A DNA stretch of 64,000 nucleotides from Octopus bimaculoides (lineage: Eukaryota): NCBI RefSeq assembly GCF_001194135.2, contig NC_068986.1, forward strand, positions 53,694,085-53,758,084, in the 5' to 3' direction. The position numbers and the translations under genes are program-made. Positions within the stretch are counted from its first letter, which is position 1, and each line of letters begins with the position of its first letter. Shown here piece by piece: positions 1-20,963 of this stretch. The notes beneath the pieces were generated by a model. It was not told where the DNA came from. It saw only the letters and a program-made list of their open reading frames with translations, and did not search any database.

Positions 1-1325
1 ACTGAGAGTACAGAAAGGAAAACCATCACACAAAGAACGTTGAATATAGCAACAAAGAAGGTAGAAATAGCAGCCGTAGAAGCGGTCGAGGAGTGCTTAA
101 AAGAGATAAAGGAGATAACCACGTTCTAGACCAGAGGACGAAAGTTCGGCACGGTAGAGGTGCGCTTCGCCAATGAAAACGAAGCTAAGAAATACTCCAC
201 CGTAGCCTTGAAATCGGCGGAGTGGGCACTGTTACCTACTTACTGTGGAAAACGTGCGGCCAGAGTAAGGATAGGGAGAGTGCCCCCTGAAATTGACGAG
301 GCATGGCTTGTGGCAGCCATCCTCTACAATACAGAAGATGAAGCGGAAGTCCTGAAAATGTCGAAGACTGCGAAGTTCAATTGGTGGGGATAACGGTAAT
401 GGTCTATATCGGCTTACCAGACCGCCATAAGATTGTTGAAGAGCTCGTTTAACCAAACTGAGAATTATAGTGGAAGGTAGACCTCCAATATGTTTTTCAT
501 GTGGAGTAAGAGGTCACATGAAAGCCAAGTGTCCCCAGTAACACGAACAGGAGGAGGCGGAGAAGGAGAGTCGGGAAGAAGAGATTGTAACGGCAGAGGA
601 GGAAAAGGAGTTTACATTGGTAGAAAGGCAGAGAAAAAACAGCGAATCTCCACCAAAAAAGAAAAGGAAGGTGGAGGAAAATGAGAACGAAAAAGAAAAA
701 ATCAGATATCAATGGGAGATCGAACGCAAAGACCAGAACCTTCAACTAGTAAGGAGGAGAAAAGACGGAAGTAGAAACTAGAAAGTGAGAAAGAGGAACA
801 AATACCGATAGAAATACTAACAACAGAGAGTGAGGTGATACAGGCGAGAAAGCCACCGAAGAGGAGATACGAAGGAATTCTGGTTGCATACGAAAAGAGC
901 ATGGAGATAGAGAAAAAGGATTGCCAAGATGAAAGGCGTTATAAGAATTATGCTGGCCGAAAAGGAGGGGAAACAGAATGAGAAAGCAGTGTTGCTGGAA
1001 GATGAGAGAGCAGGAAGATTGAGAGAAATATTCGGAGACAGGATAGAAATAACAGCATTACGATTTAGATACGACGAACTACCATCAGTGACAGATTTCC
1101 AGGAGTTAATAGAATTTATGGTGTGAACACGATACAAACTGGAAAAACAATTCTTGATGTAAAAACAGTAAAATGGAACTTTCTACTTTGGTAGGTAGGA
1201 AAGCCATTTCATTCTCATTATTTTCATAATTCATTCGCTAATTGTTTGTATGTACCCCATGTTCTGTGTTGTCTGTCTTTGTGGTGTCTTTTCAAAACTC
1301 AGGCTTTATGCCTATAGTAAAGAAA
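1..1325 (+). mobile_element. ORF1/Gag-only retroelement copy 1 (RRM-like + CCHC), decayed, 5' end outside the window
   Basis: Frame +1 reads ...TRGRKFGTVEVRFANENEAKKYSTVALKSAEWALLPTYCGKRAARVRIGRVPPEID, with stops at 127-129 and 391-393. Frame +2 carries the zinc knuckle CFSCGVRGHMKAKC at 491-532. A Glu/Lys-rich linker follows, then the C-terminal RLREIFGD segment (929-1126), a 3' UTR with AGGC-TTTAT-GCCT (1301-1313) and AGTAAA. Confidence 0.8.
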
Positions 1326-1629
1326 CCCATTGTCAACTGAAATTTCTTTTTTTAATAATTGGTAATGGTGTTATCTCAACAATGTCCTCTTTCTGATTAT
1401 CGGTTATATCAACATTTTATCCTAATTAAAAAGCCCTTTCCAGTAATGGTCTATAATCACACGACAAAACTGTCGAAATTTACAATGAGAACTTTTATTT
1501 CTCAGCCTACCTTGTTAGCTAAAAAGAAACTTCTGAAACACAAATGAAGCATTGAAAATCTGAATTTGTTATATTCCGCTAATGTATTCGAGGGATACCT
1601 TTTTTTTTTCTTTATGTAACATAAATTAG

Positions 1630-1672
<43 letters not shown>

Positions 1673-3407
1673 GCTTTCATACTTTTCGTTTCTTCTTCAG
1701 CTTGATCCCAGCAGCGTCGGTAATTTCCTGGTGGTATCTATATTGCTAGAAGCTAATGGTTCTAAGAACATATTCAGTCAATTGGTTTGTACGACTGCTA
1801 TTTTAGCGAACTTTATCGAGGACAACTGTACGTTGAAACCAGCTACATTTTTTTGTGTCGATAAATCAGTCGGAAAATTTGTCCATTGCTTTCAGCAGTT
1901 GGCTTCAAAGACCAGATTCATTCCAATCTGACGACCCGAAGAGAGATTTTGTCTACTAATTGCTTGGATAACCTCAGTTTATTCGAAATACTGAAACTCG
2001 CTATATTAGACATAAGTGTTTGTATTAGTTAGCAGAATAGTTTCTTTGAAGCATTTACAGTCGGCCATTTGATATTCAGTCGATATGTTAATAATTTTAT
2101 GTGAAACAGCATAACTAATATTCTAACAATTGAATGTTTTGAAAAATACTTTCAATTTCGTTCTTACGTGGGTACTTCTACAACTACTACCATTTCAGCA
2201 AGTCTCTAGTTCAAATTGTCATGAAATCTTTGTGAAAGCTGGAGTTTTGTTGTACATTTTCCTGTTTAGTTATTTATAATTTTAACTGTTTCAAAACAAT
2301 CTTTTGAGATTGATTGAATATGCAGAGACTTAAAATTTTTCTTCGCAAATAATTCTTAAGTATTGGTGACAATTAATTTTAGCCAATTTCTTATAACACC
2401 TGTTTTTCTAAACCGAAGTTATTTGTGAAATGTTTTTAGGCTGCAAACTAACCAGATGGCTTTCTTTTTAACGTGAGGTAGGACTTGGATACGTTTGTTT
2501 TTTTTTAATTTAAATTTTGTATTTTAAATTCCCTTTGTTATCGAAGTCTTCCACATTACTCGTACTATATACTTGCAATGGATATGTGTAATAAGCTTAC
2601 TCAAATATCCAGGTCGCAGTATATGTATTGGGCATATTTGGTATTTGCACGAATTTGATACATCTATTTTTAATGTAGTAAGTTTGTATTTAATATATAT
2701 CTATAATATTGTCAGTAAAGAGGGATTCAAAAATGCAAAAGAACAGGCATTCTAACTTTTGAAAACCAACTCCACCCCCCCACCCACCAAACTTTTTTTT
2801 TTTTTAGCAACGATTAAATTTTGGCGTGGTCGTCATTATCTATTTTATATACACACACACACACACACATATGATTTACAGTACTCATTGAGTGCAGGTT
2901 CTGAATAATGCTTCTTTGCAGTGAATTTATAACCTAACTTCTTAATGTACAATGAAGTGTTAATTAGGAAGCTACGAGTATTTAATACTAAAATATCGAC
3001 TCCAAGTGTGTTTAATTAGTAGATTTAGAGCACATATCAGCACGCGTAAATTATTCTTTAACATAATTAGCTCTCCACTTCTCAAATTACATTAGTGTGA
3101 CTGACTCTATTGGTGCTAATTACTCTTGAGAAAGCATAAATATTACAATCTCGCCCTCTAAAAGAAATCAGGACCATATCTATTACAATTTTCCAAATAC
3201 GTGGTCACGTTTAAGATTATTTTAAACTGTTGCTGAACTTAGCTCCACTATCCTTGCCTGATTTGGTACTTATCTTGGCACTGTTGCCAAAGGTGTTGAA
3301 TCTGAAGTTGTTGAGTCCCTAAATTATATGAAGTTGGAGGTCCTTTTAAAAAGAAAAAAAACCTTGCCAGATGGTCTTTAAGAGAAAATTAGCAGAATTT
3401 GTTATTG

Positions 3408-3514
3408 GAGACTCGGCGAAAGTAAAGAATACGTACACCCTGTGTATAGGGGTTGTGGTTTTTGTTACGCCGAAAACAAGTGGTGTACGTATTCTTTAGA
3501 GCCGCCGAAGTCTC
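3408..3514. repeat. Small inverted-repeat (MITE-like) element
   Basis: Perfect 17-bp inverted repeat TAAAGAATACGTACACC (3423-3439) / GGTGTACGTATTCTTTA (3482-3498), extended by GAGACTCGGCG / CGCCGAAGTCTC. Confidence 0.5.
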
Positions 3515-3999
3515 TGCTGTCGAAGTCTCTGCTCTAAGCTGAAAGTTTGTTTAGCTTATGTTCATCTGATTCCGATTACATGGGCCAGAATTGTTAGGTG
3601 ATGGAGACTTGTTTCCAATTACTAATCACTGTTTACAGAAGTTTGACATTATCTCAGATATTCTAAACTTCAAATTTAAGAACTACAGTCTTTCAACTTT
3701 AATTTTTGGCAAAAAATTTCCTTTCTTTTTTTTCTTTTTTTTAGCAAGCAAAAGTTCTTTCATTCTTCGGTTATAATAAGTACCCACCAGGTATTACGAT
3801 CATTTCAATCGATTTTTTATACTTTCAAAATCTGTGATCTGTTAATCTTGGAAATATATTTGCTTGGACTTCATCAAATTACCCTTCGGTCATGACTGAT
3901 CATGGAATATATACTTGATGGAGTGTTATCACTTAGCAATAGCAACATTACTTGAGATTAAAAGACGAAAGCTGGAGTGACATTCTCCGTGGTAGAGGT

Positions 4000-4390
4000 C
4001 GCATCTGTATGACTTCAGATAGCGATTTAGGATTTTCCTTCGCCGCCCTCCGTCAGCCACAAAGCTCTCTCAAGAATGTGAATTATTACCAAGTGACTTT
4101 CATGTAGACCTACCTCCTTTTTAGCGCCAATTGTGACGGCCAGTTCCCCGGGATGCCAACTATCCATGGAACCTTTGGGAAGCAGCCTTCTTCAATATAG
4201 CGACATGGCCCAACCAGCACAATCTTTGCTGCTTGGGCATTGTACATTCTGGGAGGTCCAGTATGAGACAGGACCACTGCGTTTGTTACTCTTTCTAGGA
4301 TATAGTCAGGATACGACTGATGCACCTTAAGCTGAAGGTGTTCAATCTTCTCAACTGTTCGTGGGGCATATCTCACTATCGTACAGAATT
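4000..4390 (-). mobile_element. RTE (BovB-like) LINE, 3' ORF2 fragment
   Basis: Frameshifted translation RLNTFSLRCISRILTIS*..RVTNAVVLSHTG..KQQRLCWLGHV matches the RTE C-terminal motifs RLNTFHLRCLRRIL..W.DRVTN and RRLRWLGHV. Confidence 0.8.
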
Positions 4391-4832
4391 GGATTGATCG
4401 AGATGAACTTACAGAAAAGCTATCGCTCATTTTATCACAATTCGATATTAACTGATATTTCATGTATCGATAGGAGTGGTTTTTGATCCATTATCATCTA
4501 ATTATCGGCTGTAATTGGCGAACTCCGATTATTGGAATGCATATTCTGGATATTTACCAAACTGTGATAGCTTAGGTGATGGTTCCAAGTTTCTTAGCTT
4601 CAATGCTGAAATTTGAACAATGAAATGTGACTATAACGCTGATTAACAGCACGAGTTGTATTGCACAAATATATATTGTGGGTTCTTCTCCTTGTATACA
4701 TGATGCCAATTTTTACTTTATAGTAAAACACATTGACTTTGGCATGTCATTTCTTCTCATCTATATTTCTGAACTATTATATTCTACCGCTTAAATCATT
4801 TACTTTTGCGTATTAACATTTTATAAATGAAA

Positions 4833-4990
4833 TGCAGCGAACTGGCGGAATCGTTAGCAAAATGCTTAGCGGCATTTCGTCCGTCTTTACAATCCGAGTT
4901 CAAATATCCACTGAAGTCGACTTAACTTTCATCCTTTCGGAGTTAAAATAAACACCAGTTGAAAACTGGAGTCGACTTAATCTCTCAGCC
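4833..4990 (+). mobile_element. tRNA-derived SINE family S2 (Deu/Nin-like central domain)
   Basis: A box TGGCGGAATCGTTAG, B box GAGTTCAAAT, then TTTCATCCTTTCGGAG...AAATAAACACCAG. Related copies lie at about 22668-22840(+), 24195-24340(-), 24565-24690(-), 48080-48310(-) and 58830-59400(-, stacked). The domain name is from recollection. Confidence 0.7.
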
Positions 4991-6670: not shown

Positions 6671-6671
6671 C

Positions 6672-6882
6672 CTCTTTTACTTGTTTCAGTCATTTGACTG
6701 TGGCCATGCTGGAGCACCGCCTTTAGTCGAGCAAATCGACCCCAGAACTTATTCTTTATAAGACCAGTACTTATTCTATCACTCTTTTGCTGAACTGCTA
6801 AGTTACGGGGACGTAAACACACCACCATTGGTTGTCAAGCGATGGGGGGGGGGAACAAACACACACACAAACAAATACACAC

Positions 6883-6916
<34 letters not shown>

Positions 6917-7074
6917 GACTGGCTTCTTTGTTTCCATCTACCAAATCCACTCACAAGGCTTTGGTCGGCCCGAGGCTATAGTAGAAGACACTTGCCCAAG
7001 GTACCACGCAGTAGGACTGAACCTGGAACCATGTGGTTGGTAAGCAAGCTACTTACCACACATCCACTCCCGCC
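6672..7074 (-). mobile_element. tRNA-derived CORE-type SINE family S1 (octopus OR-like), full length
   Basis: Head GGCGGGAGTGGATGTGTGGTAAG...GGTTCAGTCC, CORE-like ACCTTGGGCAAGTG, internal (TA)n/(CA)n. Other copies at about 23960-24100(-), 26397-26765(+), 27262-27520(-), 35838-35970(+), 40560-40890(-), 49678-50098(-) and 53975-54125(+). Confidence 0.85.
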
Positions 7075-7234
7075 TACATTTTTTTTCTGTTGTTGCTGTT
7101 ATTCTTGACCCTTACCTTAATATTCTTGTATCTTTGTGTGTTCATGTTGTTGCCATCGTGACTGTTTGTCGGTTTGCACCATAACAGTAACTTCACAAAC
7201 TGCTGCAACAGCATGAACAACATCATGTAGGCGA

Positions 7235-8000: not shown

Positions 8001-8063
8001 GATCACTTTAGTCTCACCACAAACTCAAAGCAATTGTTTGTTTTTTTAAACGAGGACAACTGC

Positions 8064-9517
8064 TGATTCTTTATTCACAAAGGGATTAAGCAGAGGAGAC
8101 TGTATAGGACATTACAAAGTGGGGTGAAATCGAATTAAAAATGAATGATTATATAAGGAAAAAGTTTGAATGATGGTTACCGGGCCCCACGACCCAGGTA
8201 ACATCATTGAACATTTTTTTTTTACAATGTACATAAATTTTCAGTTAGTTTTACTTTGCTTGAAGTCGCTACAGTTTTCATCATTTCTTTTCTTTTTTGA
8301 GAATTTATTTCTCTCTGCAGTTACTTGCTCATGTGTGTTTGTGTATTCGTGATTTTTCACTTTTGTTTATGGGAGGGAGAGAACGAGCGTTTTTCTTCCT
8401 CCCAGCAACTTTCCATTCACCATCACTTACCTCTGTAGACGTTGATATTAACGGTGTCATCTTTTGTCGTGACCATTTCTCTCTCCATCTCCTGCTTCTC
8501 CCCTGGGACCTCCTCTTCACCTTTCCTCCTGCTGCACACTGGCCTCCCTCTGACTTTCTTCCTGTGCTTCAGGTTGTAGGGCTGGGGGGGGCACGTTTTA
8601 CTTGTGTGCCCCGTCTGTCTGCACTCTAATTCTGCCCTGCACGGTGACTTTTAACTTCGTTTCATCCGGAAGAATGACGAATTCCGGTATACCATCAATG
8701 TCCGCTGGTATGGCTTGAATCGTTGCTCTTAAGCCTCTGCCACACCAATTCTGAACACTTTTCTCCTCCAAACTCCCAGTGTTACCTCTTTTCTTGGCGA
8801 AGGCGGCTGCCAGGAGCTATGTCGGTTTAATTTCCCATGCGAACCCTTGTATCGTTATTTTTGTTTTGCCGAAGTATGTCGGCAAAAGAGCCAGTTCCTT
8901 GGTCTGCAGGGTGATTGCTAAGTAGACCTTGGCATCATTCTCAGCTATAAACTGAGCCTCACCCTACCATATTTCCTTTCACGTCTCACAGATGCTAGTG
9001 TGTACATAATAGGCTTCAATGCTTTCCATCTCCTCTATCTTCTTAGTCTTCAGCGACAGCGTCCTGTAAATCAGTTTTGCTCTTCATTTCCTCCATTACC
9101 TCTTTGGTGGGAGCTAACCTTACGTTAGCTCCCTCCCCGCGAAAAATTATTTGAAATTTCTTTATGGCCTCTGGCTTGATGTTGGACCGTTTCAAGCATA
9201 TCCTTCCGTGCTTTCTCCTGAATCGCTGGTGTATCCCAAGTCACCGTCGCTCTTCCAGAGCTCGTACATATCATCTTCCATTTTGTGTAGGCACACCCTA
9301 TACGAAGTGTAAATAATTCGCCGCTAAACGGAGGAAAACAGCAGGAAACAAGCCTGTAAAGGCCAACAATATGTCGCAAAACACTAGCAGTTCTTTGACA
9401 ATTTTTCAACAAAGGTCGTCCCAAAAGCGAAAACCTTCAACAAAAATCAACGGTAGTTCAACAATTGACTTTCGATAATAAATATGAATAACCGTTACAC
9501 GCGATGAAATCAACTGT
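8064..9517 (-). mobile_element. ORF1/Gag-only retroelement copy 2, apparently full length (~1.45 kb), with a 14-bp flanking direct repeat
   Basis: ACGAGGACAACTGC occurs at both 8050-8063 and 9518-9531. Candidate ATG at 9281-9279. The decayed ORF reads LIYRTLSLKTKK..RKYGRV..QFIAENDAKVY..ELALLPTYFGK, then the knuckle remnant CRQTGHTSKTC and EWKVAGRKKN. AATAAA at 8075-8070. Confidence 0.8.
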
Positions 9518-9531
9518 ACGAGGACAACTGC

Positions 9532-9790
9532 AATATCACTTTTCCATTCTCAGTTATAAATATATTGCATTCAATATTAAAAGGTGGTACGCCATATGCT
9601 TCAAGAATATGGAACGTTCTTTTTCTATGTATGGAATTAAATATCTTGAAAAATAATGAATATTGATGCTAATGGCAAATTCTTTCAAACTCTTGATGAT
9701 TCTCCTTAGAACTAAAATGTTTGATAGTGGTGCAGGATTTTTGAAAACCACATGAAGTCCTGCTCAGTAAAGGGTCTATACATGCTTGGA
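9532..9790 (-). mobile_element. RTE LINE reverse transcriptase fragment
   Basis: CGFQKSCTT..LSNILVLRRIIKSLKEF resembles the RTE RT segment NGFR.GRST..QIL.LRRIIE. Confidence 0.6.
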
Positions 9791-10589
9791 TACGATTTAG
9801 TATCAGTTTATCATATAATTTTGATGCAATAGTTTAAGCTAATACCCCTCTGGTGTGAAAGCATGGAAGCAGTGGTAGTCTTCGGAAGAAAGCACTTACT
9901 TAACCAATACCACCAATTGTAGCATTGGAGTTCTTTATTATAGTCGACGATGTAATGAGTGTAAAATCTGAGTAAAGCTGATAGTATTTTATCTATACCT
10001 TTTTGTATGAACCTATCTTCTTGAACGTGTACAATATCTAAATTATGCTCTATTGCTGAGATTAGAAATTCATTTATGCGGGAGTCTTTTGTTATTGTGT
10101 GAGCATTGTGTTGTCACTGAATGCGTTTTATTGTAATTTAAGTTTTCTAGGTTTCTATAAAGAATTAGCATCAATACCCACCTTTCCAATTGGATTTGGG
10201 ATGGGCATGTCATATTTTGGAGAATACGATTTATCCTTTCAACTTGCCAGAAATCTAGAATTGTTAGAGGGTTTTTTACTCAAGTGTTTTTAGTGTCATA
10301 GCTTTGTGTGCAAAAATAGTATTAGTTGGTTGAAAGTCCTCGCTGAATGGCTTTTATTTCAGAGATTTCCTTCTAGATCGCTTGTCTTCACTACGACTGT
10401 GGAGCACCGTCTAGCCTTGCAGATTTTAATGTTACCTTCTAGATATTATACGGGATGGCCGTTAATTCTCCCGAATTTCTTTGCCCTATCTTGGTTTTTT
10501 CAATGTGTCTAAAAATCCTCCTCACTAAGAACGCTTGATGGGGTTGCCGGTTTAGTCGCCGATGACCCATCTATGCAACAGATTGTACT

Positions 10590-11440
10590 GGGCACATGTT
10601 ACCAGTAGCACTCGAGCGATCTCGAAACTATGAAAACGCAGCCCAGGTGATAACCTCTGATGGCAAAACCTATTTTTTCAGTATTTTAGCTGGTATATTT
10701 CAAGGTGATACATTAGCTCCATTTTCGCTTTGGCTTATTTATTGAAAGTATTTAAAATATCTAGAGATAATGGAATTGTTATAGAACTTAGAAAGGAGAC
10801 CAAGTGTCTAGAGATACTAGATACGATTTGGTTTATAACGACACTGCACTGATCAATTAATATCGCAGCTAACGAGAAATAAATTACGTTGTATTGAAGA
10901 TACAGCGAATTTAATTGGTTTACATCTTAATGCAAGAAAAATAGACGTAAAATCTTTTACTGGTCAAACCATTAACCGAGTGGATCAATTTAAATTTTTA
11001 GGGAAGGATGATTTTAATGTAAGGAAAGGATTGGCATGGGCTGCAATAAAGAAGCTAGACAAAATATGAAAGTCTAACATGGACAGAAAACTGAAACTTA
11101 GACTTTTAAGGGCATGTGTAGAACGGATTCTGCTATACAACTCAGTAACTTGGACTAGAGCATGAAACTTAAAAATGAAAATTGATATACTCTAGCTATT
11201 GAGAATTTTTAACGCCAGTTGGAAAGATCATATAGCCAACAGGGAGTTATACAAAGGCCTTCCACGGCTATCACACCGTTCGGCAGAGAAGATTGCTCTT
11301 TTCTTACCTTTGTCACAAAGTAGGAAACCAACCGGTTTCTAAGCATTTACTTTGGTCGCAATCAGGAGGTCGGCGGCGCAGAGGTGCAGGAATGAAGATC
11401 TTTCCCAAAATGCTTAGCAAGGATACAGACGTCTGAGATA
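10590..11440 (+). mobile_element. RTE LINE, decayed RT and C-terminal region
   Basis: Motifs ILAGIFQGDTLAP (~10680-10725), decayed YADD (Y.DTALI), DQFKFLG, GLAWAAIKKLDKI*KSNMDRKLKLRLLRACVERILLYNSVTWT and VRQRRL. Ends at a (TA)n tract. Confidence 0.85.
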
Positions 11441-11461
11441 TATATATATATATATATATAA

Positions 11462-13485
11462 CAGATGTGTGTGTAATCGCTTATCACGTGAAAACGGCTT
11501 CACTATTTACTTGTGATACATGAATAATTTGACCTCGGATAAATCTTAGGCTCTTCATTTGATTTTTTTTATCTCTAATTAAAAATAAATATTGCTTTAT
11601 ATTTAAGATTCACTTGTTTAAAAAGGTTTCTCAATGTCAACTTCCGGTACGGACATGACAAAAACGGCGACGTCTCTCACTCTCTACTTTTAATGTTCGC
11701 TTTCTGTAAACAACTACGATNNNNNNNNNNNNNNNNNNNNNNNNNNNNNNNNNNNNNNNNNNNNNNNNNNNNNNNNNNNNNNNNNNNNNNNNNNNNNNNN
11801 NNNNNNNNNNNNNNNNNNNNNNNNNNNNNNNNNNNNNNNNNNNNNNNNNNNNNNNNNNNNNNNNNNNNNNNNNNNNNNNNNNNNNNNNNNNNNNNNNNNN
11901 NNNNNNNNNNNNNNNNNNNNNNNNNNNNNNNNNNNNNNNNNNNNNNNNNNNNNNNNNNNNNNNNNNNNNNNNNNNNNNNNNNNNNNNNNNNNNNNNNNNN
12001 NNNNNNNNNNNNNNNNNNNNNNNNNNNNNNNNNNNNNNNNNNNNNNNNNNNNNNNNNNNNNNNNNNNNNNNNNNNNNNNNNNNNNNNNNNNNNNNNNNNN
12101 NNNNNNNNNNNNNNNNNNNNNNNNNNNNNNNNNNNNNNNNNNNNNNNNNNNNNNNNNNNNNNNNNNNNNNNNNNNNNNNNNNNNNNNNNNNNNNNNNNNN
12201 NNNNNNNNNNNNNNNNNNNNNNNNNNNNNNNNNNNNNNNNNNNNNNNNNNNNNNNNNNNNNNNNNNNNNNNNNNNNNNNNNNNNNNNNNNNNNNNNNNNN
12301 NNNNNNNNNNNNNNNNNNNNNNNNNNNNNNNNNNNNNNNNNNNNNNNNNNNNNNNNNNNNNNNNNNNNNNNNNNNNNNNNNNNNNNNNNNNNNNNNNNNN
12401 NNNNNNNNNNNNNNNNNNNNNNNNNNNNNNNNNNNNNNNNNNNNNNNNNNNNNNNNNNNNNNNNNNNNNNNNNNNNNNNNNNNNNNNNNNNNNNNNNNNN
12501 NNNNNNNNNNNNNNNNACTTTTACGAAAATTAAAATGGGGATTAAATGAAAACAATGATTTACGTGAATATCCTCACAAGAGTAATTGAAATAAATGGCG
12601 ATTGTGGAACCCCCCACGCACGCACGCGCGTGCGCATATACACGTTTGTCTTTGTAAATATGTTTGTATACATTTATATATGTGTGTGTTTGTAAGAGAC
12701 AGTGTGAGTGTGAGAGGTTTGTTGTCATGTATACGTACATGCATAAATATACATACATCTTTGGATGTATGCATATGACAACACAGCCCTTGACTCACTC
12801 ACTCACACTCTCTCTTACAAACACGCCCGCACGCGCATACACACGTGTGTCTTTGTAAATATGTTTGTGTACATTTATGTATGTGTGTTTGTAAGAGACA
12901 GTGTGAGTGAGTCAAGGGGTGCATGTGTGTGAGAGCGGTGTGTATGTAGTATTTACTCTCTCTCTCTCTCTCTCTCTCTCTTATACACACTCACACACGA
13001 AATAGAGAGTGAAGCTTTTTGCCGTTGTTACGTCAATACCGGAAGTTGACATTGAGGAACCTTTTTAAAGTGAATCTTAAATATAAAGCAATATTATTTA
13101 TTTTTAATTAAAAAAATCAAATGAAGAGCGTAACATTTATCCGAGGTCAAATTATTCACGCATCACAAGTATGGAAGCATTTGAAGTCGATTTCACGTGA
13201 AAAGCGATTACACACGCATCTATTTTATATATAGTATAGATTTACTCTCCCTCTCTCTCTCTCATACACACGCACACACACACAAAGATGTATGCATGTA
13301 CGTATACATAACAACAAACCTCTCTCTCTCTCTCTGTCACACACACACACACACTTCCATTTCATCTGATGTGTGTGTGTGAGAGGGGTTCCACAATCGC
13401 AATTTATTTCAATTACTCTTGTGAGGATATTCACGTAAATCATTTTTTCATTTAATCCACATTTTAATTTTCGTAAAAGTTTCCA
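11462..13485. repeat. Composite foldback/inverted repeat with microsatellite core, interrupted by a gap
   Basis: 11462-11690 is the reverse complement of 13001-13225. 12518-12613 is the reverse complement of 13385-13480. A direct duplication lies at 12618-12716 / 12822-12918. Confidence 0.65.
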
Positions 13486-13639: not shown

Positions 13640-13683
<44 letters not shown>

Positions 13684-14900: not shown

Positions 14901-16939
14901 CATTCTTTTTGGTTTTCAATTGTCATCGACGCTTCTGTGACTACGTTGTTTTTCTTTTTTTACCTCTGTCCCCAGAATTTGGTCCATATTAGTCTGGCCT
15001 CTACCCAGCATAGTTGTCCTATCAGGAGCTTGCACTTTCTTGGCATAGTTCTCAGGCTCGTTGAGGCACACACACCAGCACATCGTAACAAGGACTGGAC
15101 CTTGTCAACTAATCGGCAACACCGCTCATCTATACTATATTCGTGCAGCTATTAGAAATCGTATTGGCAATTGTAGTAATTCTATTAGGACACCTACTGA
15201 TACTTCCAAATTTGTTCCGTTTTATTACATTTTCTGATTATCCAACTCTTGCTAATCGATAACTGTTTGGTTAGAAGCAGCAGTAGCCCTAATTCTTCAA
15301 TGTCAGAATATTGCTACCATTTTAGTCGATGTCTAATTCGTTGAATTGCGTTCTACATTCTATAGAAGTGGGGTTTTTATTTTGAGTAATTATCTCCTCC
15401 AGGCGTTTACTTCTGTAGCTGGAGCTAAAGTTGTAAAATGCTTTACTGTTTAACCAGAAATTAGTTCTGTTCGAGCAGACGCATGATCGAGGGCGTTCTA
15501 ACTATGACTATTCCGCTTTGTTTTTAGCCTCTCTTCGATTACATTATCTAACGAGTTATCACTTTTAAAATGGAAGTGTAGTGTTTTTTAAGCTATTTCT
15601 AACAGTTCAAATGATGTAGAGGCTTTATCGTTGCCTCGGCCATTTACAGCTGCAGTCAGCACCGGATTTACACTTAGTGAGGCCCTAAGCTATATAAAAG
15701 CTTGGAATCCCTTTGTTATATTACAAGTTTCACAAAAATTGAAAATGTATGCACTTTAATTATTTTGAAAATCCTACGGATTGAGATTCGAAATTGTAGC
15801 TGGGTTAGCTATGTCTTAAATCTCACACTGGTAGTTGTCAATTTAGCACCGCTCTGCGTAACACCACTTTGTAATGTTTTTGCTGAGCGTTTTGTTCCAA
15901 GTATTGGCACTAAGCATCTGTCAGAGGGTGTTATTCGGTGCCTGTGAAAGCTTTCTTAGCTGAAGTGGAATAGAATAACCTCTCTTTTAGTAATTAATGA
16001 ATGGTGGCTTTTTCAAGCATTGTGCGGTGTGGAGAGGCCCTGCAAAAATCACTGATTTCTGACATGCTGGCGATTATGATTTAACCTTAAGTTCATCTCT
16101 TCATTCACTGAACGTACACTTTTTTTCGTTACTTTCTTTCAATGAATTGAAAATTCGTTGGATAATTCTTTTTCCTTCTGCCAATAGCCAGTTCGGTTGT
16201 TTTTGTAAATCCTATGGTATGTTCAAGCTGTTTTAAGCCAACTCTTCGGAAAATGTTTTCACTTAGTATCTACTGGCCTGCCATCTCCTTTCGCTTGAAT
16301 GTTAGCAATAAAAATATCCAGAAACAGCATTCCTCTAAGCGTCTCTTTTCCGACCTCATAAAAAAAAATCTTTACTATATTTCATCCTCTATTGAAGACA
16401 TCTAGGTCATATTTTTCTGCTGCTGATTTTTTTTTTAAAATCAGTACACATATTTCCTCTTGTCTTTCAAACTCTTCATATTGAAGACGATTATTTTACA
16501 TCGTAATCAGTCAGCACTGGAGTCTAACCTATTTATTTCTCTGGTTAACACATTTACTTTCTAAATACTCCGACGCCTTTCGTACTGCAACTATCCCCCG
16601 TTTCTGTCTTTTTCATAAGGCCAGTCAATTAACCTCCTGAACAACCCAGAACCTCTTGGTAATTTAATTCAACTGGCCTTAGCCACTTCTACTTTTCATA
16701 TACATGACAGGAAAAGTGCTTTCTCTCGAGCGTATCCAAGTTAAGCTGAACTTTTCAGAAAACCGATACCATCTTCCTAGATCATACCATCAACATTCAC
16801 AGCACTAAAAATCCCAAGTAGTTTACTTTCAAATAAGCTACTTCTGTACAATCGCAGAACACTGCTGACAATATCCCAAATGAGTTGTTACTAATTCTAA
16901 TCAATTAGTAGGCATTTACTACCACAATGCTTGCAAAAT

Positions 16940-17340
16940 TATGAAAACCAAACAATATCTTCGTGCCGTAGTCTGCAAGATCCATCGCCTTTCAAATTGT
17001 AATCGAACTCTTTGGTTGCTTTATTAAAAGGCTCTGACTTTCCAGATTTCATCATTTCACTTTCAATAACTCTACACATTTTTTTACCCCTCGCTTCCAA
17101 ATTTTTTATTCTTGGTGAAATCATGGATCCGTATCTGGAAAGCGTGTACTTTCGTCTGTGTTGGTTGGGCGCGATGGTGTACCTATTCAGGGTTAAGTTG
17201 TACTTCTACCTAGCTCACACAAAAAAAAAAGCAAATTCGCTTACCCTCACGGTGTCCTTAGGCGTGCAGCTCATAGCTCCGTCTATCTTCAATGGTAACT
17301 GGAACTAACTAACTTAAACGCATGCGCATAAGCGAGCTAC
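16940..17340 (-). mobile_element. ORF1-only element array unit E (5' region and possible N-terminal ORF1 remnant)
   Basis: Begins GTAGCTCGCT directly after the AATAAA of the preceding unit. It shares ACC..GAGGTA.G.GAAT..T-run..TGAGCT with 20435-20300. ISPRIKNLEARGKK..VIESE weakly resembles ITFKVFSLKGKK..VEAE. Confidence 0.45.
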
Positions 17341-18534
17341 TTTATTACAATATCTTTGCCATAAAGGCATTACACAGAGGGGACACTACAACACATGTGG
17401 GGACATATAACAATTAAAAATGATATAATGAATGATACATGAAAATGCACGTGAATAACAAATTTAAAATATAACATGAATGATATCTGAAAATGATACG
17501 AAGAGCGTGCTACTCATCCCACAGAGTAACGCCACTCGCTGCCTCTGAGNNNNNNNNNNNNNNNNNNNNNNNNNNNNNNNNNNNNNNNNNNNNNNNNNNN
17601 NNNNNNNNNNNNNNNNNNNNNNNNNNNNNNNNNNNNNNNNNNNNNNNNNNNNNNNNNNNNNNNNNNNNNNNNNNNNNNNNNNNNNNNNNNNNNNNNNNNN
17701 NNNNNNNNNNNNNNNNNNNNNNNNNNNNNNNNNNNNNNNNNNNNNNNNNNNNNNNNNNNNNNNNNNNNNNNNNNNNNNNNNNNNNNNNNNNNNNNNNNNN
17801 NNNNNNNNNNNNNNNNNNNNNNNNNNNNNNNNNNNNNNNNNNNNNNNNNNNNNNNNNNNNNNNNNNNNNNNNNNNNNNNNNNNNNNNNNNNNNNNNNNNN
17901 NNNNNNNNNNNNNNNNNNNNNNNNNNNNNNNNNNNNNNNNNNNNNNNNNNNNNNNNNNNNNNNNNNNNNNNNNNNNNNNNNNNNNNNNNNNNNNNNNNNN
18001 NNNNNNNNNNNNNNNNNNNNNNNNNNNNNNNNNNNNNNNNNNNNNNNNNNNNNNNNNNNNNNNNNNNNNNNNNNNNNNNNNNNNNNNNNNNNNNNNNNNN
18101 NNNNNNNNNNNNNNNNNNNNNNNNNNNNNNNNNNNNNNNNNNNNNNNNNNNNNNNNNNNNNNNNNNNNNNNNNNNNNNNNNNNNNNNNNNNNNNNNNNNN
18201 NNNNNNNNNNNNNNNNNNNNNNNNNNNNNNNNNCAACAAGGACAGCTGCCGTCACTCAAGCTACTTCTATATCCGGTGGAATTGCTTCTATCCTCACCTT
18301 GGAAGTCTTTCTTCCAAGGTATGTGTGCAGAAGCACTACCTCCTCTGTTTTCACCGCCACACTCGCCAGCTTCCTCGCCTCCTCTATTGTTCTAAATTGT
18401 ACGACCATTGTGCCATATTTTCTTCCTTTCGTCATGTATATTATTTCTTTCGACTTCTCTGTTAGTGCTTTTTCCGTTTCAGCTTCCACCTGCTCGGCCT
18501 TTTTCCCTTTTAGTGAGAACACCTTAAAGGTGAT
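17341..18534 (-). mobile_element. ORF1-only element array unit D (RRM-like region, gap, 3' UTR)
   Basis: Intact-looking frame ITFKVFSLKGKKAEQVEAETEKALTEKSKEIIYMTKGRKYGTMVVQFRTIEEARKLASVAVKTEEVVLLHTYLGRKTSKVRIEAIPPDIEVA at 18534-18256. The 3' UTR has the TGCC-TTTAT-GGCA stem (17369-17357) and AATAAA (17346-17341). Confidence 0.8.
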
Positions 18535-18839
18535 NNNNNNNNNNNNNNNNNNNNNNNNNNNNNNNNNNNNNNNNNNNNNNNNNNNNNNNNNNNNNNNNNN
18601 NNNNNNNNNNNNNNNNNNNNNNNNNNNNNNNNNNNNNNNNNNNNNNNNNNNNNNNNNNNNNNNNNNNNNNNNNNNNNNNNNNNNNNNNNNNNNNNNNNNN
18701 NNNNNNNNNNNNNNNNNNNNNNNNNNNNNNNNNNNNNNNNNNNNNNNNNNNNNNNNNNNNNNNNNNNNNNNNNNNNNNNNNNNNNNNNNNNNNNNNNNNN
18801 NNNNNNNNNNNNNNNNNNNNNNNNNNNNNNNNNNNNNNN

Positions 18840-19830
18840 AATTTGCCACGAGGGCAGAACACAGAGGTAGCTTTGCGGGCTGGACATAAACATTAACGAA
18901 CATGAATGATTATGAAATGAAACAAGATGGGGGAGAACGAACGATGCCCACCAATCGCCGCCTCTCGAAAACACTGTTCTTTTTCAAAAACACATTGAGG
19001 TTTTAAACCTTTTAAATAAAACTAATTTGAGGTTCTCTTGTTACAAAAAAAAACACAATATATAACTTTAATCAGGCACTAGTCCTCTTATCAATTTGAC
19101 TGCTTCAAAGCAGTCCCTAGTTTTCACGTTATGGTGAACTATGCTGACAAAAGAGTCTTCGGAGAAGATCTCGGCAATCCTGCTGCGGACCTCCCCGGTT
19201 ACGATCTCCGCAGCTATGTGCGAAGGCCACCCCGGAGCATCCGTACAGCTCAGTTCGTATCCGTCCTCTCCTACTAGCTCATGAATCTTTGCTTGTACAC
19301 TTATTCCCACCTGACAAAAGAAAACATATCCTTTTAGGTTGGGTGGGGTCTGTACACTCTGTGGTAGACACACTTCCTCTTGACGGAGTTTCGTCCTCCT
19401 TCAGTGGCCCAATTCCCTCTGAAGGAGTCTCAATCTCTGCCGGTAGCACACTACCTGCTGCCGGCNNNNNNNNNNNNNNNNNNNNNNNNNNNNNNNNNNN
19501 NNNNNNNNNNNNNNNNNNNNNNNNNNNNNNNNNNNNNNNNNNNNNNNNNNNNNNNNNNNNNNNNNNNNNNNNNNNNNNNNNNNNNNNNNNNNNNNNNNNN
19601 NNNNNNNNNNNNNNNNNNNNNNNNNNNNNNNNNNNNNNNNNNNNNNNNNNNNNNNNNNNNNNNNNNNNNNNNNNNNNNNNNNNNNNNNNNNNNNNNNNNN
19701 NNNNNNNNNNNNNNNNNNNNNNNNGGGGGGGGGGGGTCCCTCAAGAATCACTGGGTACCTTGACCACGCCGTCCTTAAAAGGCCCGGAAACACCAGACTA
19801 GCAATCGACTGGGACCAGAGGGTCAATACC
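18840..19830 (-). mobile_element. ORF1-only element array unit C (5'-truncated; C-terminal domain and 3' UTR)
   Basis: YPVILEGPPP precedes the gap at the position where copy 1 has IIVEGRPP-CCHC. ORF 19373-19068 contains GWPSHIAAEIV..RIAEIF. The 3' UTR matches 20646-20436 (GTCCAGCCCGCA..GCTAC) and carries the stem TGCC-CTCGT-GGCA (18856-18844). Confidence 0.75.
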
Positions 19831-20435
19831 GCTTTTGAAAACCAAAATTAGAAGAAATAAATGAAATGAGAAAAGAAAATAATTGTGTTCCGGCAGGGAA
19901 TCCTATTTTCTGAACAAAAACGTTCACTTCGACTGTTATTCCAGCTGTCTGAGTTCTGTTCTTGACACACTCCGCAATGCAGGGTAAATCCACAGGGAAT
20001 GTTCAAATTTGGCAAAAAATGCCACTCAAAATTTCACGAGAATTGAAACAATTCAAAAGTTCACCTTCTTCGTAATGGTAAATCCACATGCAGAATTAAA
20101 TTGGCAAAAATGCCACACCAAATTTCACGAAGAAATCTTTCCCCTTCGTCGCTGTGTTGGCACGCCCACCCACAACGACGAATGAGGAACACAGATTTTT
20201 CTCGCAAAGCGAGCAACAACTACAGTAGCATAAAGGAGAGGAGTTGCCCAGAGCTTGTGAAAAGATATATACAACAATAATTCTCACTCAGCTCAAAAGA
20301 AAAACGATTCCACCTACCTCGGTCGACTTCTTCGTAATCACTTCTTCGGGAGAGTGTAGACTTTCGACCGCCTTGTTCAATGTTCTTACCGGAAGTAGCT
20401 CATCCGCGCAAGACCGGAAATGGTGAGCAAGCTAC
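19831..20435 (-). mobile_element. Array unit B: ~600-bp non-coding segment starting with the family 5' junction motif
   Basis: Starts GTAGCTTGCT after AATAAA. No ORF1 homology was seen. Internal duplication at 19983-20040 / 20077-20132. Confidence 0.45.
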
Positions 20436-20963
20436 TTTATTTCAATAAATTTCGCCATTAACGGCGTTACATAGAGGGGACAGACAAAGATGAAGTAGCT
20501 GCGGGCTGGACATGGACATTAATGAGATGAGGGTGATAAGGATGAAACAAATGAGAGAGGCACCAGCGCCCGCCGACTAATAACCCTTCGAAAACAGTTC
20601 TTTTTTTTTCCTTTTAAAATTACAATTTTTCCACAATTTCAATATATTAACAATTAAAAATATCACAATTTTCCTCATTCCACCCGTCCGCAAGCAGATA
20701 TGCTGTCCCTGCCAAACAAGTGTCTATTGTTAGGCTTGAATTTGCGGCGAGGTAATAGAAATCTTTATGGTTATATTTTTCTATGACTTTTGCCAATATG
20801 TTGTCATTTAGAACCTCCGCAGTTACCTGTGGAGGCCATGTGGAACTACTCGCACAATCCGAATAGCTCCAAGAATTCATTCACCGCCCCTCCCTCATAG
20901 TACATGATAATATAATCATTATCCACACTGGGAGGGACGTCACGCCACTCTGTCATCGGCACA
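20436..20963 (-). mobile_element. ORF1-only element array unit A (C-terminal domain and 3' UTR)
   Basis: ORF 20880-20647 contains TWPPQVTAEVL, homologous to GWPSHIAAEIV. The 3' UTR has the CGCC-GTTAAT-GGCG stem (20466-20453) and AATAAA (20441-20436). Confidence 0.75.

What the first reader, a model, noticed from the sequence alone, without database searches (positions are those of the whole stretch)
1301..20466. 3'-terminal stem-loop conserved by compensatory substitutions across family members
Seen in sequence, on the element strand just upstream of the poly(A) signal: AGGC-TTTAT-GCCT (1301-1313), TGCC-TTTAT-GGCA (17369-17357), TGCC-CTCGT-GGCA (18856-18844) and CGCC-GTTAAT-GGCG (20466-20453). 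The stem sequence changes (GGC/GCC flips, outer pair A-T, T-A or C-G) while pairing holds. It is usually preceded by CCTCT.TGT. Copy 2 has lost the stem. Established knowledge: stringent LINE RTs such as eel UnaL2 recognise a 3' stem-loop. Inference: this is the cis signal that recruits a partner RT, or a 3'-end processing element.
Basis: partly seen in the sequence, partly recalled or inferred. Interest (0 to 1): 0.72.

Follow-up and report, generated by a model that had tools for sequence, protein, structure and literature searches.

The report
Shared 3' tail hairpin of octopus retrotransposons
A four-base-pair RNA hairpin at the 3' end of these octopus repeats is real and kept by compensatory changes; it is the common tail of an L1-like LINE that encodes reverse transcriptase, of its copies that lack that gene, and of abundant SINE-like repeats, so it is a new example of a known way of sharing a reverse transcriptase.

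Summary
All four hairpins are at the stated coordinates, and copy 2 has lost the stem. The window alone (5 copies) gives only weak statistics. Three other octopus loci change that.

- **Same tail on three kinds of element.** It ends full-length RT-encoding LINEs in O. vulgaris and O. sinensis (ORF1, then ORF2 with endonuclease, RT and zf-RVT). It also ends ORF1-only copies and SINE-like repeats in O. bimaculoides and in this window. The tail reads TGTCCCCTCTNTGT, then a 4-bp G+C hairpin with loop NUURU, then AATAAAG.
- **Covariation.** Across 18 tails, 90% of cells pair, against 64% when shuffled. Three of four pairs show changes on both sides, G-U pairs occur, and the fifth flanking position never pairs. 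RNAalifold predicts only this hairpin.
- **Retroposition.** Copy 2 has a perfect 14-bp target-site duplication and no poly(A) tail. Its end lies 5 nt after AATAAAG, which looks like part of the tail structure rather than only a poly(A) signal.

Best reading: this is the tail signal by which the LINE's ORF2 protein starts reverse transcription, and the ORF1-only and SINE-like elements borrow it. Binding is inferred, not tested. It is a new member of a known kind (shared LINE/SINE tails such as eel UnaL2). Assembly gaps leave the internal make-up of copies A, B and C open.

The parts
1..1328 (+). Copy c1: an ORF1-only LINE derivative, cut at its 5' side by the window start. The ORF1 remnant (RNP1-like RKFGTVEVRF, one CCHC knuckle, C-terminal domain) runs to the stop at 1124-1126 with several frameshifts and stops. 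The 3' UTR is 1127-~1328.
   Evidence: zf-CCHC, E 1.7e-4; 67-74% identity to O. bimaculoides proteins; C-terminus like P0075. No gap lies between the ORF1 stop and the tail, so ORF2 is truly absent.
1301..1313 (+). c1 tail hairpin AGGC-UUUAU-GCCU, followed by AGTAAAGAAACC at 1316-1327.
   Evidence: Its position is homologous to the O. bimaculoides ORF1-only tail through the shared TTTGTGGTGTCTT, and its arms match the second SINE-like tail type (S2).
8064..9517 (-). Copy c2: a complete but decayed ORF1-only element of 1454 bp, ACAGTTGATTTC...GTGAATAAAGAATCA, with no poly(A) tail.
9518..9531 (-). 5' copy of the target-site duplication of c2, GCAGTTGTCCTCGT.
   Evidence: It is a perfect 14-mer; about 3e-4 such matches are expected by chance in the stretches compared.
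8050..8063 (-). 3' copy of the target-site duplication of c2.
8073..8085 (-). c2 site homologous to the hairpin, TCCC-TTTGT-GAAT. The stem is lost, apparently by deletion of the 3' arm in a dead copy.
17331..17549 (-). 3' UTR and tail of copy C: CCTCTGTGTAA at 17380-17370 and AATAAAGTAGCTCGCT at 17346-17331. Upstream it ends at the gap 17550-18233.
   Evidence: 26 of 28 identical to the O. vulgaris LINE tail just upstream of the hairpin.
17357..17369 (-). C tail hairpin UGCC-UUUAU-GGCA.
18259..18534 (-). ORF1 fragment (RNP1-like region) assigned to copy C and bounded by gaps on both sides. Its link to the C tail is not proven.
   Evidence: E 1e-15 to c1 ORF1.
18844..18856 (-). B tail hairpin UGCC-CUCGU-GGCA. 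The gap starts 4 nt downstream, so the end of B is unread.
18840..19465 (-). Copy B: 3' UTR 19067-18840, preceded by an unassigned reading-frame remnant 19465-19071.
   Evidence: 3' UTR homologous to A, E 5e-7; coding part unassigned.
20453..20466 (-). A tail hairpin CGCC-GUUAAU-GGCG, with a 6-nt loop.
20426..20963 (-). Copy A: an unassigned reading-frame remnant 20963-20650, the 3' UTR 20646-~20436, and AATAAAGTAGCTTGCT at 20441-20426.
24508..24552 (-). Tail of a SINE-like copy, second tail type (S2), with a decayed hairpin UCGC-CUUGU-GCCU at 24533-24521.
22794..22836 (+). Tail of a SINE-like copy with hairpin UGGC-CCUGU-GCCG at 22814-22826 (a U-G outer pair).
48221..48265 (-). Tail of a SINE-like copy, UGGC-CUUGU-GCCU at 48246-48234, with 3 of 4 pairs.
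58844..58888 (-). Tail of a SINE-like copy, UGGU-CUUGU-GCCU at 58869-58857, with 3 of 4 pairs.

Best explanation
The hairpin is the core of the 3' tail of an octopus LINE lineage of the L1/Tx1 superfamily.

**Architecture of the tail**
- A 4-bp G+C-rich stem.
- A pentaloop N-U-U-R-U.
- Usually a second, A/U-rich outer helix. It forms between the upstream UCUNUGU motif and the downstream AAUAAAGA.

**How it most likely works**
- The LINE's ORF2 protein (endonuclease, RT, zf-RVT) most likely binds this tail on the transcript. It then starts target-primed reverse transcription a few nucleotides downstream, without needing a poly(A) tail.
- RNAs that carry the same tail are copied in trans. These are ORF1-only derivatives such as window copies c1 and c2, and SINE-like elements.

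**Shown**
- The tail is shared between RT-encoding LINEs, ORF1-only copies and SINE-like copies.
- Pairing is kept through changes on both sides.
- c2 has a target-site duplication and lacks poly(A).

**Inferred**
- Binding by ORF2p.
- The start site of reverse transcription.
- Mobilisation in trans.
For: 1. **The tail sits on RT-encoding LINEs.**
   - L003 (O. vulgaris) holds head-to-tail full-length LINEs with a 5278-bp period: ORF1, ORF2 of 1132 aa, and a ~250-nt 3' UTR.
   - The 3' UTR ends TGTCCCCTCTTTGTTG-GCCC-CTTGT-GGGT-AAATAAA.
   - ORF2 matches Exo_endo_phos, RVT_1 and zf-RVT. Its best solved relative is human L1 ORF2p at E 2e-71, against 1e-24 for R2.
   - A second lineage in L002 (O. 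sinensis), with ORF2 44-60% identical, has the tail about 230-270 nt after ORF2.
   - In L004 the ORF1 relative P0056 is followed by the start of an endonuclease ORF2.
2. **The window ORF is this ORF1.** The profile of the window ORF finds P0018, which is the L003 ORF1, at E 1e-22. tblastn confirms the match.
3. **The tail is shared with non-coding SINE-like repeats.** The first SINE-like tail type (S1) matches the LINE tail at 41 of 45 positions, with 0 of 500 shuffles as good. There are further tail types, and a covariance-model search gives 23 hits at E < 0.1.
4. **Covariation over 18 tails.**
   - 90.3% of cells pair. Three of four pairs change on both sides.
   - Pair types are AU/GU/GC/UA/CG, GC/CG/GU and CG/GC/GU.
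   - All shuffles and all slid controls score lower. RNAalifold predicts only this helix.
   - The 8 G-U cells argue for pairing in sense-strand RNA rather than a DNA palindrome.
   - Loop positions 2 and 5 are invariant and position 3 is nearly so.
5. **Outer helix.** It differs in sequence between lineages. Summed length is 47 against 28.8 +/- 4.2 in flank shuffles, with 0 of 2000 as high.
6. **c2.** It has a perfect 14-bp target-site duplication and no poly(A) tail.
7. **Published mechanism for stringent LINEs.** PMC4176376 and PMC1636434.
Against: - No binding or retrotransposition assay exists for this element.
- The stem is only 4 bp. Single-sequence folding is not significant: z is -0.4 to -0.8 for 80-nt tails and about -1.8 locally.
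- The tails are related by descent. The 18 sequences hold perhaps five independent compensatory events, and the shuffle control overstates significance for related sequences.
- Mammalian L1 is the classic 'relaxed', poly(A)-dependent type, so a stringent tail in an L1-like LINE is not the default expectation.
- The outer helix is not predicted in window copies A and C.
- One LINE copy (O. sinensis) has an A-C mismatch at the outer pair.
- The full-length LINEs come from other Octopus species than, or at least other loci than, the window. No RT-encoding copy with this tail lies in the window itself.
Confidence: 0.7

Rival explanations
1. The hairpin acts in 3'-end processing, stability or export. 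It works together with AAUAAA on the Pol II transcript of the LINE, and RT recognition lies elsewhere.
For: - AATAAAG follows the hairpin by 0-10 nt in most lineages.
A dual role cannot be excluded.
Against: - No genomic copy has a poly(A) tail.
- c2 ends 5 nt after AATAAAG, which is too close for the usual cleavage distance.
- The motif and hairpin are also kept in short non-coding SINE-like elements.
- AAUAAAG is predicted to pair with the upstream motif.
- No known 3'-processing RNA family matched.
Confidence: 0.12
2. The hairpin is an inherited short palindrome in a conserved tail block and has no function. The apparent compensation reflects few events, shared ancestry and choice of alignment.
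For: - Only about five independent events.
- The stem is 4 bp and the folding z-scores are weak.
- The window-only test is marginal.
- The counting tool warns that related sequences can beat every shuffle.
Against: - Six different fully paired arm sequences occur across LINE, ORF1-only and SINE-like lineages of three species.
- Every stem change in lineage representatives is compensated, apart from one A-C. The fifth flanking position never pairs.
- Slid controls are far lower.
- The spacer next to the hairpin is randomised between c1 and C (2 of 13 identical, read directly from the sequences), while the hairpin keeps its loop and its pairing.
Confidence: 0.1
3. The signal works at the DNA level. 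The palindrome, or the A-rich end next to it, is the preferred target of the element's own endonuclease. This would explain the tail-to-head chains.
For: - Tail-to-head arrangements: LINE arrays in L003 and SINE-like chains and ORF1-only>SINE>SINE in L001.
- Three same-strand copies lie within 4 kb in the window.
- Sequence-specific insertion in some Tx1-group LINEs (from memory, not checked here).
Against: - G-T 'pairs' and arm flips (GCC to GGC) do not preserve any DNA sequence that a protein could read. They do preserve RNA pairing.
- c2 inserted into an unrelated RTE-like sequence.
- The flanks after A and C match no element head.
- This idea could be true in addition to the main explanation rather than instead of it.
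Confidence: 0.08

Closest known systems
Eel UnaL2 / UnaSINE1 and zebrafish ZfL2-1 / ZfL2-2, stringent-type LINEs of the L2 clade (PMC1636434, PMC4176376)
   Same: - A LINE and its non-autonomous partners share a conserved 3' tail.
- The tail forms a stem-loop with an internal loop or bulge.
- There is no dependence on poly(A).
- In those systems the ORF2 protein binds the stem-loop, and the loop gives specificity. Here the loop is likewise the conserved part (N-U-U-R-U) and the stem covaries.
   Different: - The ORF2 here is L1-like (zf-RVT; best solved relative human L1 ORF2p), not L2-like.
- The inner stem is only 4 bp.
- No (TGTAA)n-type terminal repeat is seen. The end is A-rich (AATAAAGAAAT...).
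- There is no experimental evidence here.
HAL1 (half-L1), the mammalian ORF1-only L1 derivatives (from memory, not read here)
   Same: A non-autonomous element that keeps ORF1 and the parental 3' end, lacks ORF2, and propagates as its own lineages.
   Different: - HAL1 relies on poly(A), as L1 does.
- The octopus copies rely, by inference, on a specific structured tail.
- Several diverged ORF1-only lineages exist here (c1, c2, the L001 copy).
L1/Tx1 superfamily LINEs with an ORF1 that has a CCHC knuckle
   Same: - ORF2 has an APE endonuclease, RT and a C-terminal zinc-binding zf-RVT domain.
- ORF1 has one CCHC knuckle after an RNP1-like motif.
- Head-to-tail arrays recall the site-specific Tx1 group.
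   Different: - No phylogeny was made, so placement within L1 as against Tx1 is open.
- Those elements normally end in poly(A) or simple A-rich repeats.
- They are not known, to my knowledge, for a covarying tail hairpin shared with SINEs.
Proposed 3' UTR stem-loops of human L1 and Alu (PMC5135761)
   Same: The idea that L1-type elements and their partners also carry a 3' stem-loop.
   Different: There the loops are not homologous sequences shared by LINE and SINE. Here LINE and SINE-like tails are 41 of 45 identical.
Octopus SINEs OK, OR1 and OR2 (Ohshima and Okada 1994, cited in PMC4758252)
   Same: Short interspersed repeats of octopus. The SINE-like elements seen here may be among them.
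   Different: No tRNA-like fold was detected in the heads here.

Membership tests
Stringent-type LINE/SINE system with a shared 3' tail | An RT-encoding LINE carries the tail at its 3' end | tested here: met
   L003: tails at 9663-9710 and 14941-14988, about 205-255 nt after ORF2 (Exo_endo_phos, RVT_1, zf-RVT). L002: tail at 15301-15343 after ORF2.
Stringent-type LINE/SINE system with a shared 3' tail | Non-autonomous elements share the same tail sequence | tested here: met
   The first SINE-like tail type (S1) against the LINE tail: 41 of 45 identical, 0 of 500 shuffles as good. ORF1-only copies c1, c2 and the L001 copy carry it too.
Stringent-type LINE/SINE system with a shared 3' tail | The tail forms a conserved stem-loop supported by covariation | tested here: met
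   90.3% paired, 3 of 4 pairs with changes on both sides, all controls lower. Caveats: few independent events, and a 4-bp stem.
Stringent-type LINE/SINE system with a shared 3' tail | Copies end at the tail without a poly(A) tract | tested here: met
   The target-site duplication of c2 places the end at ...AATAAAGAATCA. The other copies show no A-run. Only one copy has a proven boundary.
Stringent-type LINE/SINE system with a shared 3' tail | The cognate ORF2 protein binds the tail, and retrotransposition requires it | not testable with these tools
   Needs binding and retrotransposition assays.
L1/Tx1 superfamily of LINEs | ORF2 with an APE endonuclease, RT and a C-terminal Cys/His zinc-binding domain | tested here: met
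   Pfam: Exo_endo_phos 1.9e-15, RVT_1 8.2e-31, zf-RVT 5.4e-9. Human L1 ORF2p is the best solved relative at 2e-71.
L1/Tx1 superfamily of LINEs | Placement within the clade by RT phylogeny | not tested
   No reference set of LINE clades was at hand.
L1/Tx1 superfamily of LINEs | ORF1 of the RRM + CCHC type | tested here: inconclusive
   The CCHC knuckle is found. The RRM is only suggested by the RNP1-like RKFGTVEVRF. The AlphaFold model of that region has pLDDT 47 and cannot be used.
ORF1-only ('half-LINE', HAL1-like) non-autonomous derivatives | ORF1 followed directly by the parental 3' UTR, ORF2 absent, retroposed as a unit | tested here: met
   c1: ORF1 stop at 1124-1126, tail at 1301-1328, no gap between them. 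c2: 1454 bp between 14-bp target-site duplications. L001 copy. Not decidable for A, B and C because of the gaps.
tRNA-derived SINE | A tRNA-related 5' head with A and B boxes | tested here: inconclusive
   A B-box-like GAGTTCAAATTCC is present. ARAGORN and Rfam find no tRNA. Hence 'SINE-like'.
Helitron 3' hairpin | A hairpin about 10 nt before a CTRR end, with no target-site duplication | tested here: not met
   The ends are ...AATAAAGWA, not CTRR. c2 has a 14-bp target-site duplication.
Any curated RNA family (Rfam), such as the histone 3' stem-loop | A match at the gathering score | tested here: not met
   0 matches in the whole window.

The most novel reading that the evidence does not exclude
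An L1/Tx1-like LINE of octopuses has a stringent, structure-specific 3' tail, which is unusual for that superfamily.
- It, rather than or besides the RTE element reported so far (PMC9115989), is the reverse-transcriptase source for part of the very abundant octopus SINE-like repeats.
- It also supplies a family of ORF1-only half-elements.
- It tends to insert next to its own tail, building head-to-tail arrays.
Probability: 0.35. Interest if true: 0.6.

Novelty: new member of a known kind. Interest (0 to 1): 0.5.

Why it matters
- **Partner for the SINE-like repeats.** Octopus genomes are noted for their load of SINE-type repeats, and which LINE moves them is not settled. The open literature I could search names only an RTE element as a candidate active LINE (PMC9115989). 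A tail shared at 41 of 45 positions between SINE-like repeats and an intact-looking L1-like LINE gives a concrete, testable partner.
- **Evolution of tail recognition.** The finding shows a structured tail in the superfamily whose mammalian members are the textbook 'relaxed' type. This bears on how tail recognition evolved (see the discussion in PMC4176376).
- **Annotation.** The many 'uncharacterized' or 'CCHC-type domain-containing' octopus proteins of this family are LINE ORF1 remnants. Several long gene models are chimeras with them.

Tried and rejected
- **Self-comparison of the window.** Only C and A match at the DNA level (57 nt, 84%). c1 has no hit. Window-only covariation is therefore weak.
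- **Pfam on the window ORFs.** Only zf-CCHC matched.
- **Coding remnants of A and B.** They have no homologue and no significant match to the ORF1 C-terminal domain or to ORF2. They remain unassigned.
- **Search for related loci.** Metagenome and viral contigs gave nothing.
- **Exact look-ups of the UniProt-only octopus proteins.** All failed. Loci came only from RefSeq, GenBank, ENA and Logan products.
- **Rfam.** No hit in the window, and none of use in the SINE-like region.
- **tRNA search.** Negative.
- **AlphaFold on the RNP1-like region.** pLDDT 47, not usable, so no fold search was made.
- **Tandem host gene family.** This idea came from promoter-like GCGCATGCGC and CTTCCGG motifs and splice-donor-like sites after the tails of A and C. 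I dropped it because c2 has a target-site duplication and the ORF is LINE ORF1. The flanks after A and C match nothing else.
- **Other ideas dropped.**
  - Helitron hairpin and an NFI-type palindrome: the ends and arm orientation do not fit, and there is a target-site duplication.
  - Inversion of the hairpin as the source of c1's flipped arms: the loop would then read ATAAA.
- **Target-site duplication for the window SINE-like copy at 24.5 kb.** Ambiguous.

Full report
**What the window is.** The window has 36.7% G+C and 13 assembly gaps. The best protein matches of the repeat's reading frame are uncharacterized Octopus bimaculoides proteins at 67-74% identity. The window is therefore octopus, or a close relative. 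Positions 30-64 kb hold exons of a gene that reads like an ankyrin-repeat fem-1 homologue, judged by eye only. The finding lies in the repeat-rich stretch downstream of it.

**The observation.**
- The four hairpins are present letter for letter at 1301-1313 (+), 17369-17357, 18856-18844 and 20466-20453 (-).
- A profile of the ~200-nt 3' UTR finds exactly five copies in the window. I call them c1 (1127-1345 +), c2 (8270-8050 -), C (17549-17325 -), B (19067-18840 -) and A (20646-20425 -).
- At the DNA level only two pairs are significant. A matches B in the upstream UTR (E 5e-7). A matches C in the last 57 nt (E 7e-5, 84% identity).
- c1 is tied to the family by its protein: E 1e-15 to the C fragment and 4e-7 to c2.
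- c1 also aligns to C without gaps, from the shared TTGTRGTGTC to the hairpin (read directly from the sequence).
Its homologous site TCCC-TTTGT-GAAT (8085-8073) no longer pairs.

**Is it more than chance?**
- Four-bp perfect stems with at least 3 G/C pairs and a 5-6 nt loop occur at 0.8 per kb per strand here. Four at homologous places are therefore not independent chance.
- Homologous copies inherit such a feature, so the real test is whether pairing survives substitution.
- With the five window copies alone the answer is suggestive but weak:
  - 85% of cells pair.
  - Two pairs change on both sides.
  - Covariation is 0.40 against 0.11 in shuffles, reached by 12 of 500.
- The hairpin is in the minimum-energy fold of all four 80-nt tails. 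The folds themselves are not unusual: z is -0.4 to -0.8, and the local hairpins are -4.4 to -6.3 kcal/mol with z about -1.8 to -2.0.

**What the element is.**
- c1 carries a decayed reading frame with:
  - an RNP1-like motif (RKFGTVEVRF);
  - one CCHC zinc knuckle (Pfam zf-CCHC, E 1.7e-4);
  - a C-terminal domain that ends as P0075 does.
- About 200 nt of 3' UTR follow directly, with no gap in between.
- c2 is bounded by a perfect 14-bp direct repeat, GCAGTTGTCCTCGT (9531-9518 and 8063-8050).
  - The element between the repeats is 1454 bp and runs from ACAGTTGATTTC... to ...GTGAATAAAGAATCA.
  - It has no poly(A) tail.
  - About 3e-4 such 14-mer matches are expected by chance in the stretches compared.
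- c2 is therefore a retroposed, RT-less element. It inserted into a sequence that reads like an RTE-type RT fragment, judged by eye from its motifs.
- A profile search of 1.84 billion representative proteins finds 452 relatives.
  - The long ones are chimeric gene models with WD40, LDL-receptor, C2H2 or astacin parts.
  - P0007 (453 aa) looks like the intact protein.

**Bringing in other loci.** Exact look-ups of proteins that are on record gave four useful sources: L001 (O. bimaculoides chromosome), L002 (O. sinensis), L003 (O. vulgaris) and L004 (a 2.2-kb ENA contig).
- *L004.* The relative P0056 is followed at once by the start of an AP-type endonuclease frame, MALLKVGSINVRGL....
- *L003.* It holds full-length elements arranged head to tail with a 5278-bp period.
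  - Each has ORF1 (P0018), an ORF2 of 1132 aa and about 250 nt of 3' UTR.
  - ORF2 is intact in one copy and has one break in the next.
  - The 3' UTR ends ...CCACATCAGGTTGTATTGTCCCCTCTTTGTTG-GCCC-CTTGT-GGGT-AAATAAAATAAAACAC.
  - ORF2 matches Exo_endo_phos, RVT_1 and zf-RVT.
  - Its best solved relative is human L1 ORF2p at E 2e-71 over residues 3-868. R2 proteins reach only 1e-24.
- *L002.* It holds a second, diverged lineage (ORF2 44-60% identical) with ORF1 (P0016), ORF2 and the tail about 230-270 nt after ORF2.
- The window's 'Gag-like' frame is therefore ORF1 of an L1/Tx1-like LINE, and the hairpin tail is that LINE's own 3' end.
- c1, c2 and a copy in L001 are ORF1-only derivatives. The L001 copy has ORF1 at 9741-10510 and a tail ending at 10936.

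**The tail is shared with SINE-like repeats.** L001 contains short non-coding repeats with a B-box-like GAGTTCAAATTCC. They carry three tail types.
- *First type (S1).* ...TTGTTTGTCCCCTCTATGTTTA-GCCC-[A/C]TTGT-GGGC-AATAAAGAAATAAGAAAC. It is identical to the O. vulgaris LINE tail at 41 of 45 positions, with 0 of 500 shuffles as good.
- *Second type (S2).* ...AAAATTTC-[A/G]GGC-CTTGT-GCCT-AGAGTAGAAAAGAATA. These are the arm sequences of window copy c1. c1 in turn shares TTTGTGGTGTCTT with the L001 ORF1-only tail.
- *Third type.* TGGC-CYTGT-GCC[A/G/T]. It appears in L001, L002 and the window.
- A covariance model of the tail finds 23 matches with E < 0.1 in 158 kb. Six are in the window outside the five copies or are weaker SINE-like tails.
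- No tRNA fold was detected in the heads, so I say 'SINE-like'.

**Covariation with the larger set.** Eighteen tails align with the hairpin in register. One loop base of A was removed to keep register, as stated.

| Measure | Observed | Control |
|---|---|---|
| Cells paired | 90.3% | 63.7 +/- 4.5 shuffled (0 of 500 as high) |
| Covariation score | 0.65 | 0.20 shuffled (0 of 500); 0.02-0.17 when slid |
| Pairs with changes on both sides | 3 of 4 | |

- Pair types, outermost first:
  - AU 5, GU 5, GC 2, UA 2, CG 1
  - GC 8, CG 5, GU 2
  - CG 9, GC 7, GU 1
  - CG 18
- RNAalifold, run independently, predicts this helix and nothing else.
- Reading one representative per lineage, 35 of 36 cells pair, with six different fully paired arm sequences. 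The representatives are c1, C, A, the L001 ORF1-only copy, S1, the O. vulgaris LINE, the O. sinensis LINE, S2 and the third type.
- By parsimony this needs at least five double changes (inference).
- The next position outwards never pairs.
- Loop positions 2 and 5 are invariant and position 3 nearly so (N-U-U-R-U).
- G-U pairs, including one in the intact-looking O. vulgaris LINE, fit pairing in sense-strand RNA. They do not fit a DNA palindrome.
- Caveat: the sequences are related, so the shuffle counts are not probabilities. A phylogeny-aware test on many subfamily consensus sequences is still needed.

**A larger structure and the 'poly(A) signal'.**
- In several lineages the inner hairpin is flanked by a second helix.

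| Lineage | Outer helix |
|---|---|
| L001 ORF1-only copy | UUCUUUGU / AUAAAGAA |
| O. vulgaris LINE | UUUGUU / AAUAAA |
| S1 | UCU-UGUU / AAUA-AGA |
| c1 | UCUUU / AAAGA |
| Third SINE-like type | CAAAU / AUUUG |

- Over 11 tails the summed length of such a flanking helix is 47 against 28.8 +/- 4.2 in flank shuffles, with 0 of 2000 as high.
- It is not predicted in window copies A and C, which have about 10 extra nucleotides before AATAAAG.
- Three points argue that AATAAAG is mainly part of the tail rather than a conventional poly(A) signal:
  - no copy has a poly(A) tail;
  - c2 ends 5 nt after the motif;
  - the SINE-like elements carry it too.
- A double role is not excluded.

**Mechanism.**
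- The best-supported explanation is the one established for stringent LINEs.
  - The ORF2 protein binds the stem-loop of its own 3' tail and starts target-primed reverse transcription there.
  - RNAs that carry the same tail are copied in trans (PMC4176376, PMC1636434).
- Shown here:
  - the tail is shared across autonomous and non-autonomous elements;
  - pairing is kept through compensatory change;
  - the loop is conserved;
  - c2 has a target-site duplication and no poly(A).
- Inferred: binding, the start site and trans-mobilisation.
- Rivals, each argued in its own section: a 3'-processing or stability element, a functionless inherited palindrome, and a DNA-level target preference.

**Gaps.**
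- The hairpins of C and A lie well inside read sequence.
- B's hairpin is complete, but the gap 18535-18839 begins 4 nt after it, so B's end and C's 5' part are unread.
- The gap 17550-18233 separates C's ORF1 fragment from C's 3' UTR.
  - c1 needs about 800 nt between the equivalent points.
  - C has about 710 nt by the gap estimate.
  - This fits an ORF1-only copy, but an ORF2 could be hidden.
- The four gaps between 17.5 and 21.1 kb all fall in what looks like a same-strand cluster of related copies, which would explain why the assembly broke there.
- The coding remnants before the 3' UTRs of A and B resemble each other faintly (E about 0.01). They resemble nothing else.

**Comparison and novelty.**
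- The finding works like the UnaL2/UnaSINE1 and ZfL2 systems, and it meets every feature of that class that sequence can test.
- By its ORF2 the element belongs to the L1/Tx1 superfamily, not to L2. Its ORF1-only derivatives recall HAL1.
- The one paper I found on active LINEs in octopus reports only an RTE element (PMC9115989). It does not mention this LINE or its tail. Curated repeat libraries that I could not consult may hold it.
- I rate it a new member of a known kind.
- It has moderate interest because it offers a testable LINE partner for part of the abundant octopus SINE-like repeats.

Noticed in passing
window 30747-32096 (-) and 63661-63999 (-): Two exons of a host gene: a 450-aa open frame and an N-terminal ankyrin-repeat frame. 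Both read like a fem-1 homologue, judged by eye only. About 31 kb of repeat-rich intron lies between them.
   Followed up: no
window 9518-10113 (-) and 10566-11433 (+): RT fragments that look RTE-like (for example ...ILAGIFQGDTLAPF...) lie in opposite orientations. Copy c2 is inserted into the minus-strand one. The 3' end of the plus-strand one falls in or beyond the gap 11721-12516, so its tail could not be compared.
   Followed up: partly
L003 4935-16283 (O. vulgaris OX597840.1): Full-length LINEs stand head to tail with a 5278-bp period. At least three ORF1 copies are present, at about 4935, 10214 and 15498. This is either a tandem array or repeated insertion next to the element's own tail.
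   Followed up: partly
L001 36766-35981 (-) and 10884-11520 (+): Chains of SINE-like units follow one another tail to head, with about 13-nt spacers such as TTTCCTCTTAAAGA. One chain starts directly after the tail of an ORF1-only copy. The first and second tail types (S1 and S2) are mixed within one chain.
   Followed up: partly
window 19071-19465 (-) and 20650-20963 (-): The reading-frame remnants before the 3' UTRs of copies B and A share a W-P-x-x-[IV]-[AT]-A-E-[IV] stretch with each other (E about 0.01). They match neither ORF1, nor ORF2, nor any database protein.
   Followed up: partly
window 17230-17342 (-) and 20320-20439 (-): Directly after the tails of C and A come promoter-like motifs (GCGCATGCGC; two CTTCCGG) and splice-donor-like GAGGTAGG and GAGGGTAAG. 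After A there is also a 57-nt direct repeat (19983-20039 and 20077-20130). These could be element 5' UTRs or host promoters. No match was found elsewhere.
   Followed up: partly
window 48346-48478 and 48533-48665: Two 133-nt stretches are 100% identical on either side of a 54-N gap. This is most likely an assembly artefact.
   Followed up: no
window 6672-7073, 23940-24104, 26394-26762, 27238-27522, 40562-40888, 49682-50098, 53972-54141: Another abundant interspersed repeat family, 70-87% identical between copies, often next to (TA)n or (CA)n runs. It is unrelated to the tail studied here.
   Followed up: no
proteins P0005, P0028, P0064, P0109 (O. bimaculoides gene models): Database gene models fuse this LINE ORF1 to WD40, C2H2 zinc-finger, LDL-receptor class A or astacin domains. 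They are probably annotation chimeras caused by unmasked repeats.
   Followed up: partly
window 8064-8090 (-): In dead copy c2 the loss of the inner 3' arm leaves CUUUG-UGAA-UAAAG. This can still close as a small hairpin made from the outer-helix partners.
   Followed up: no
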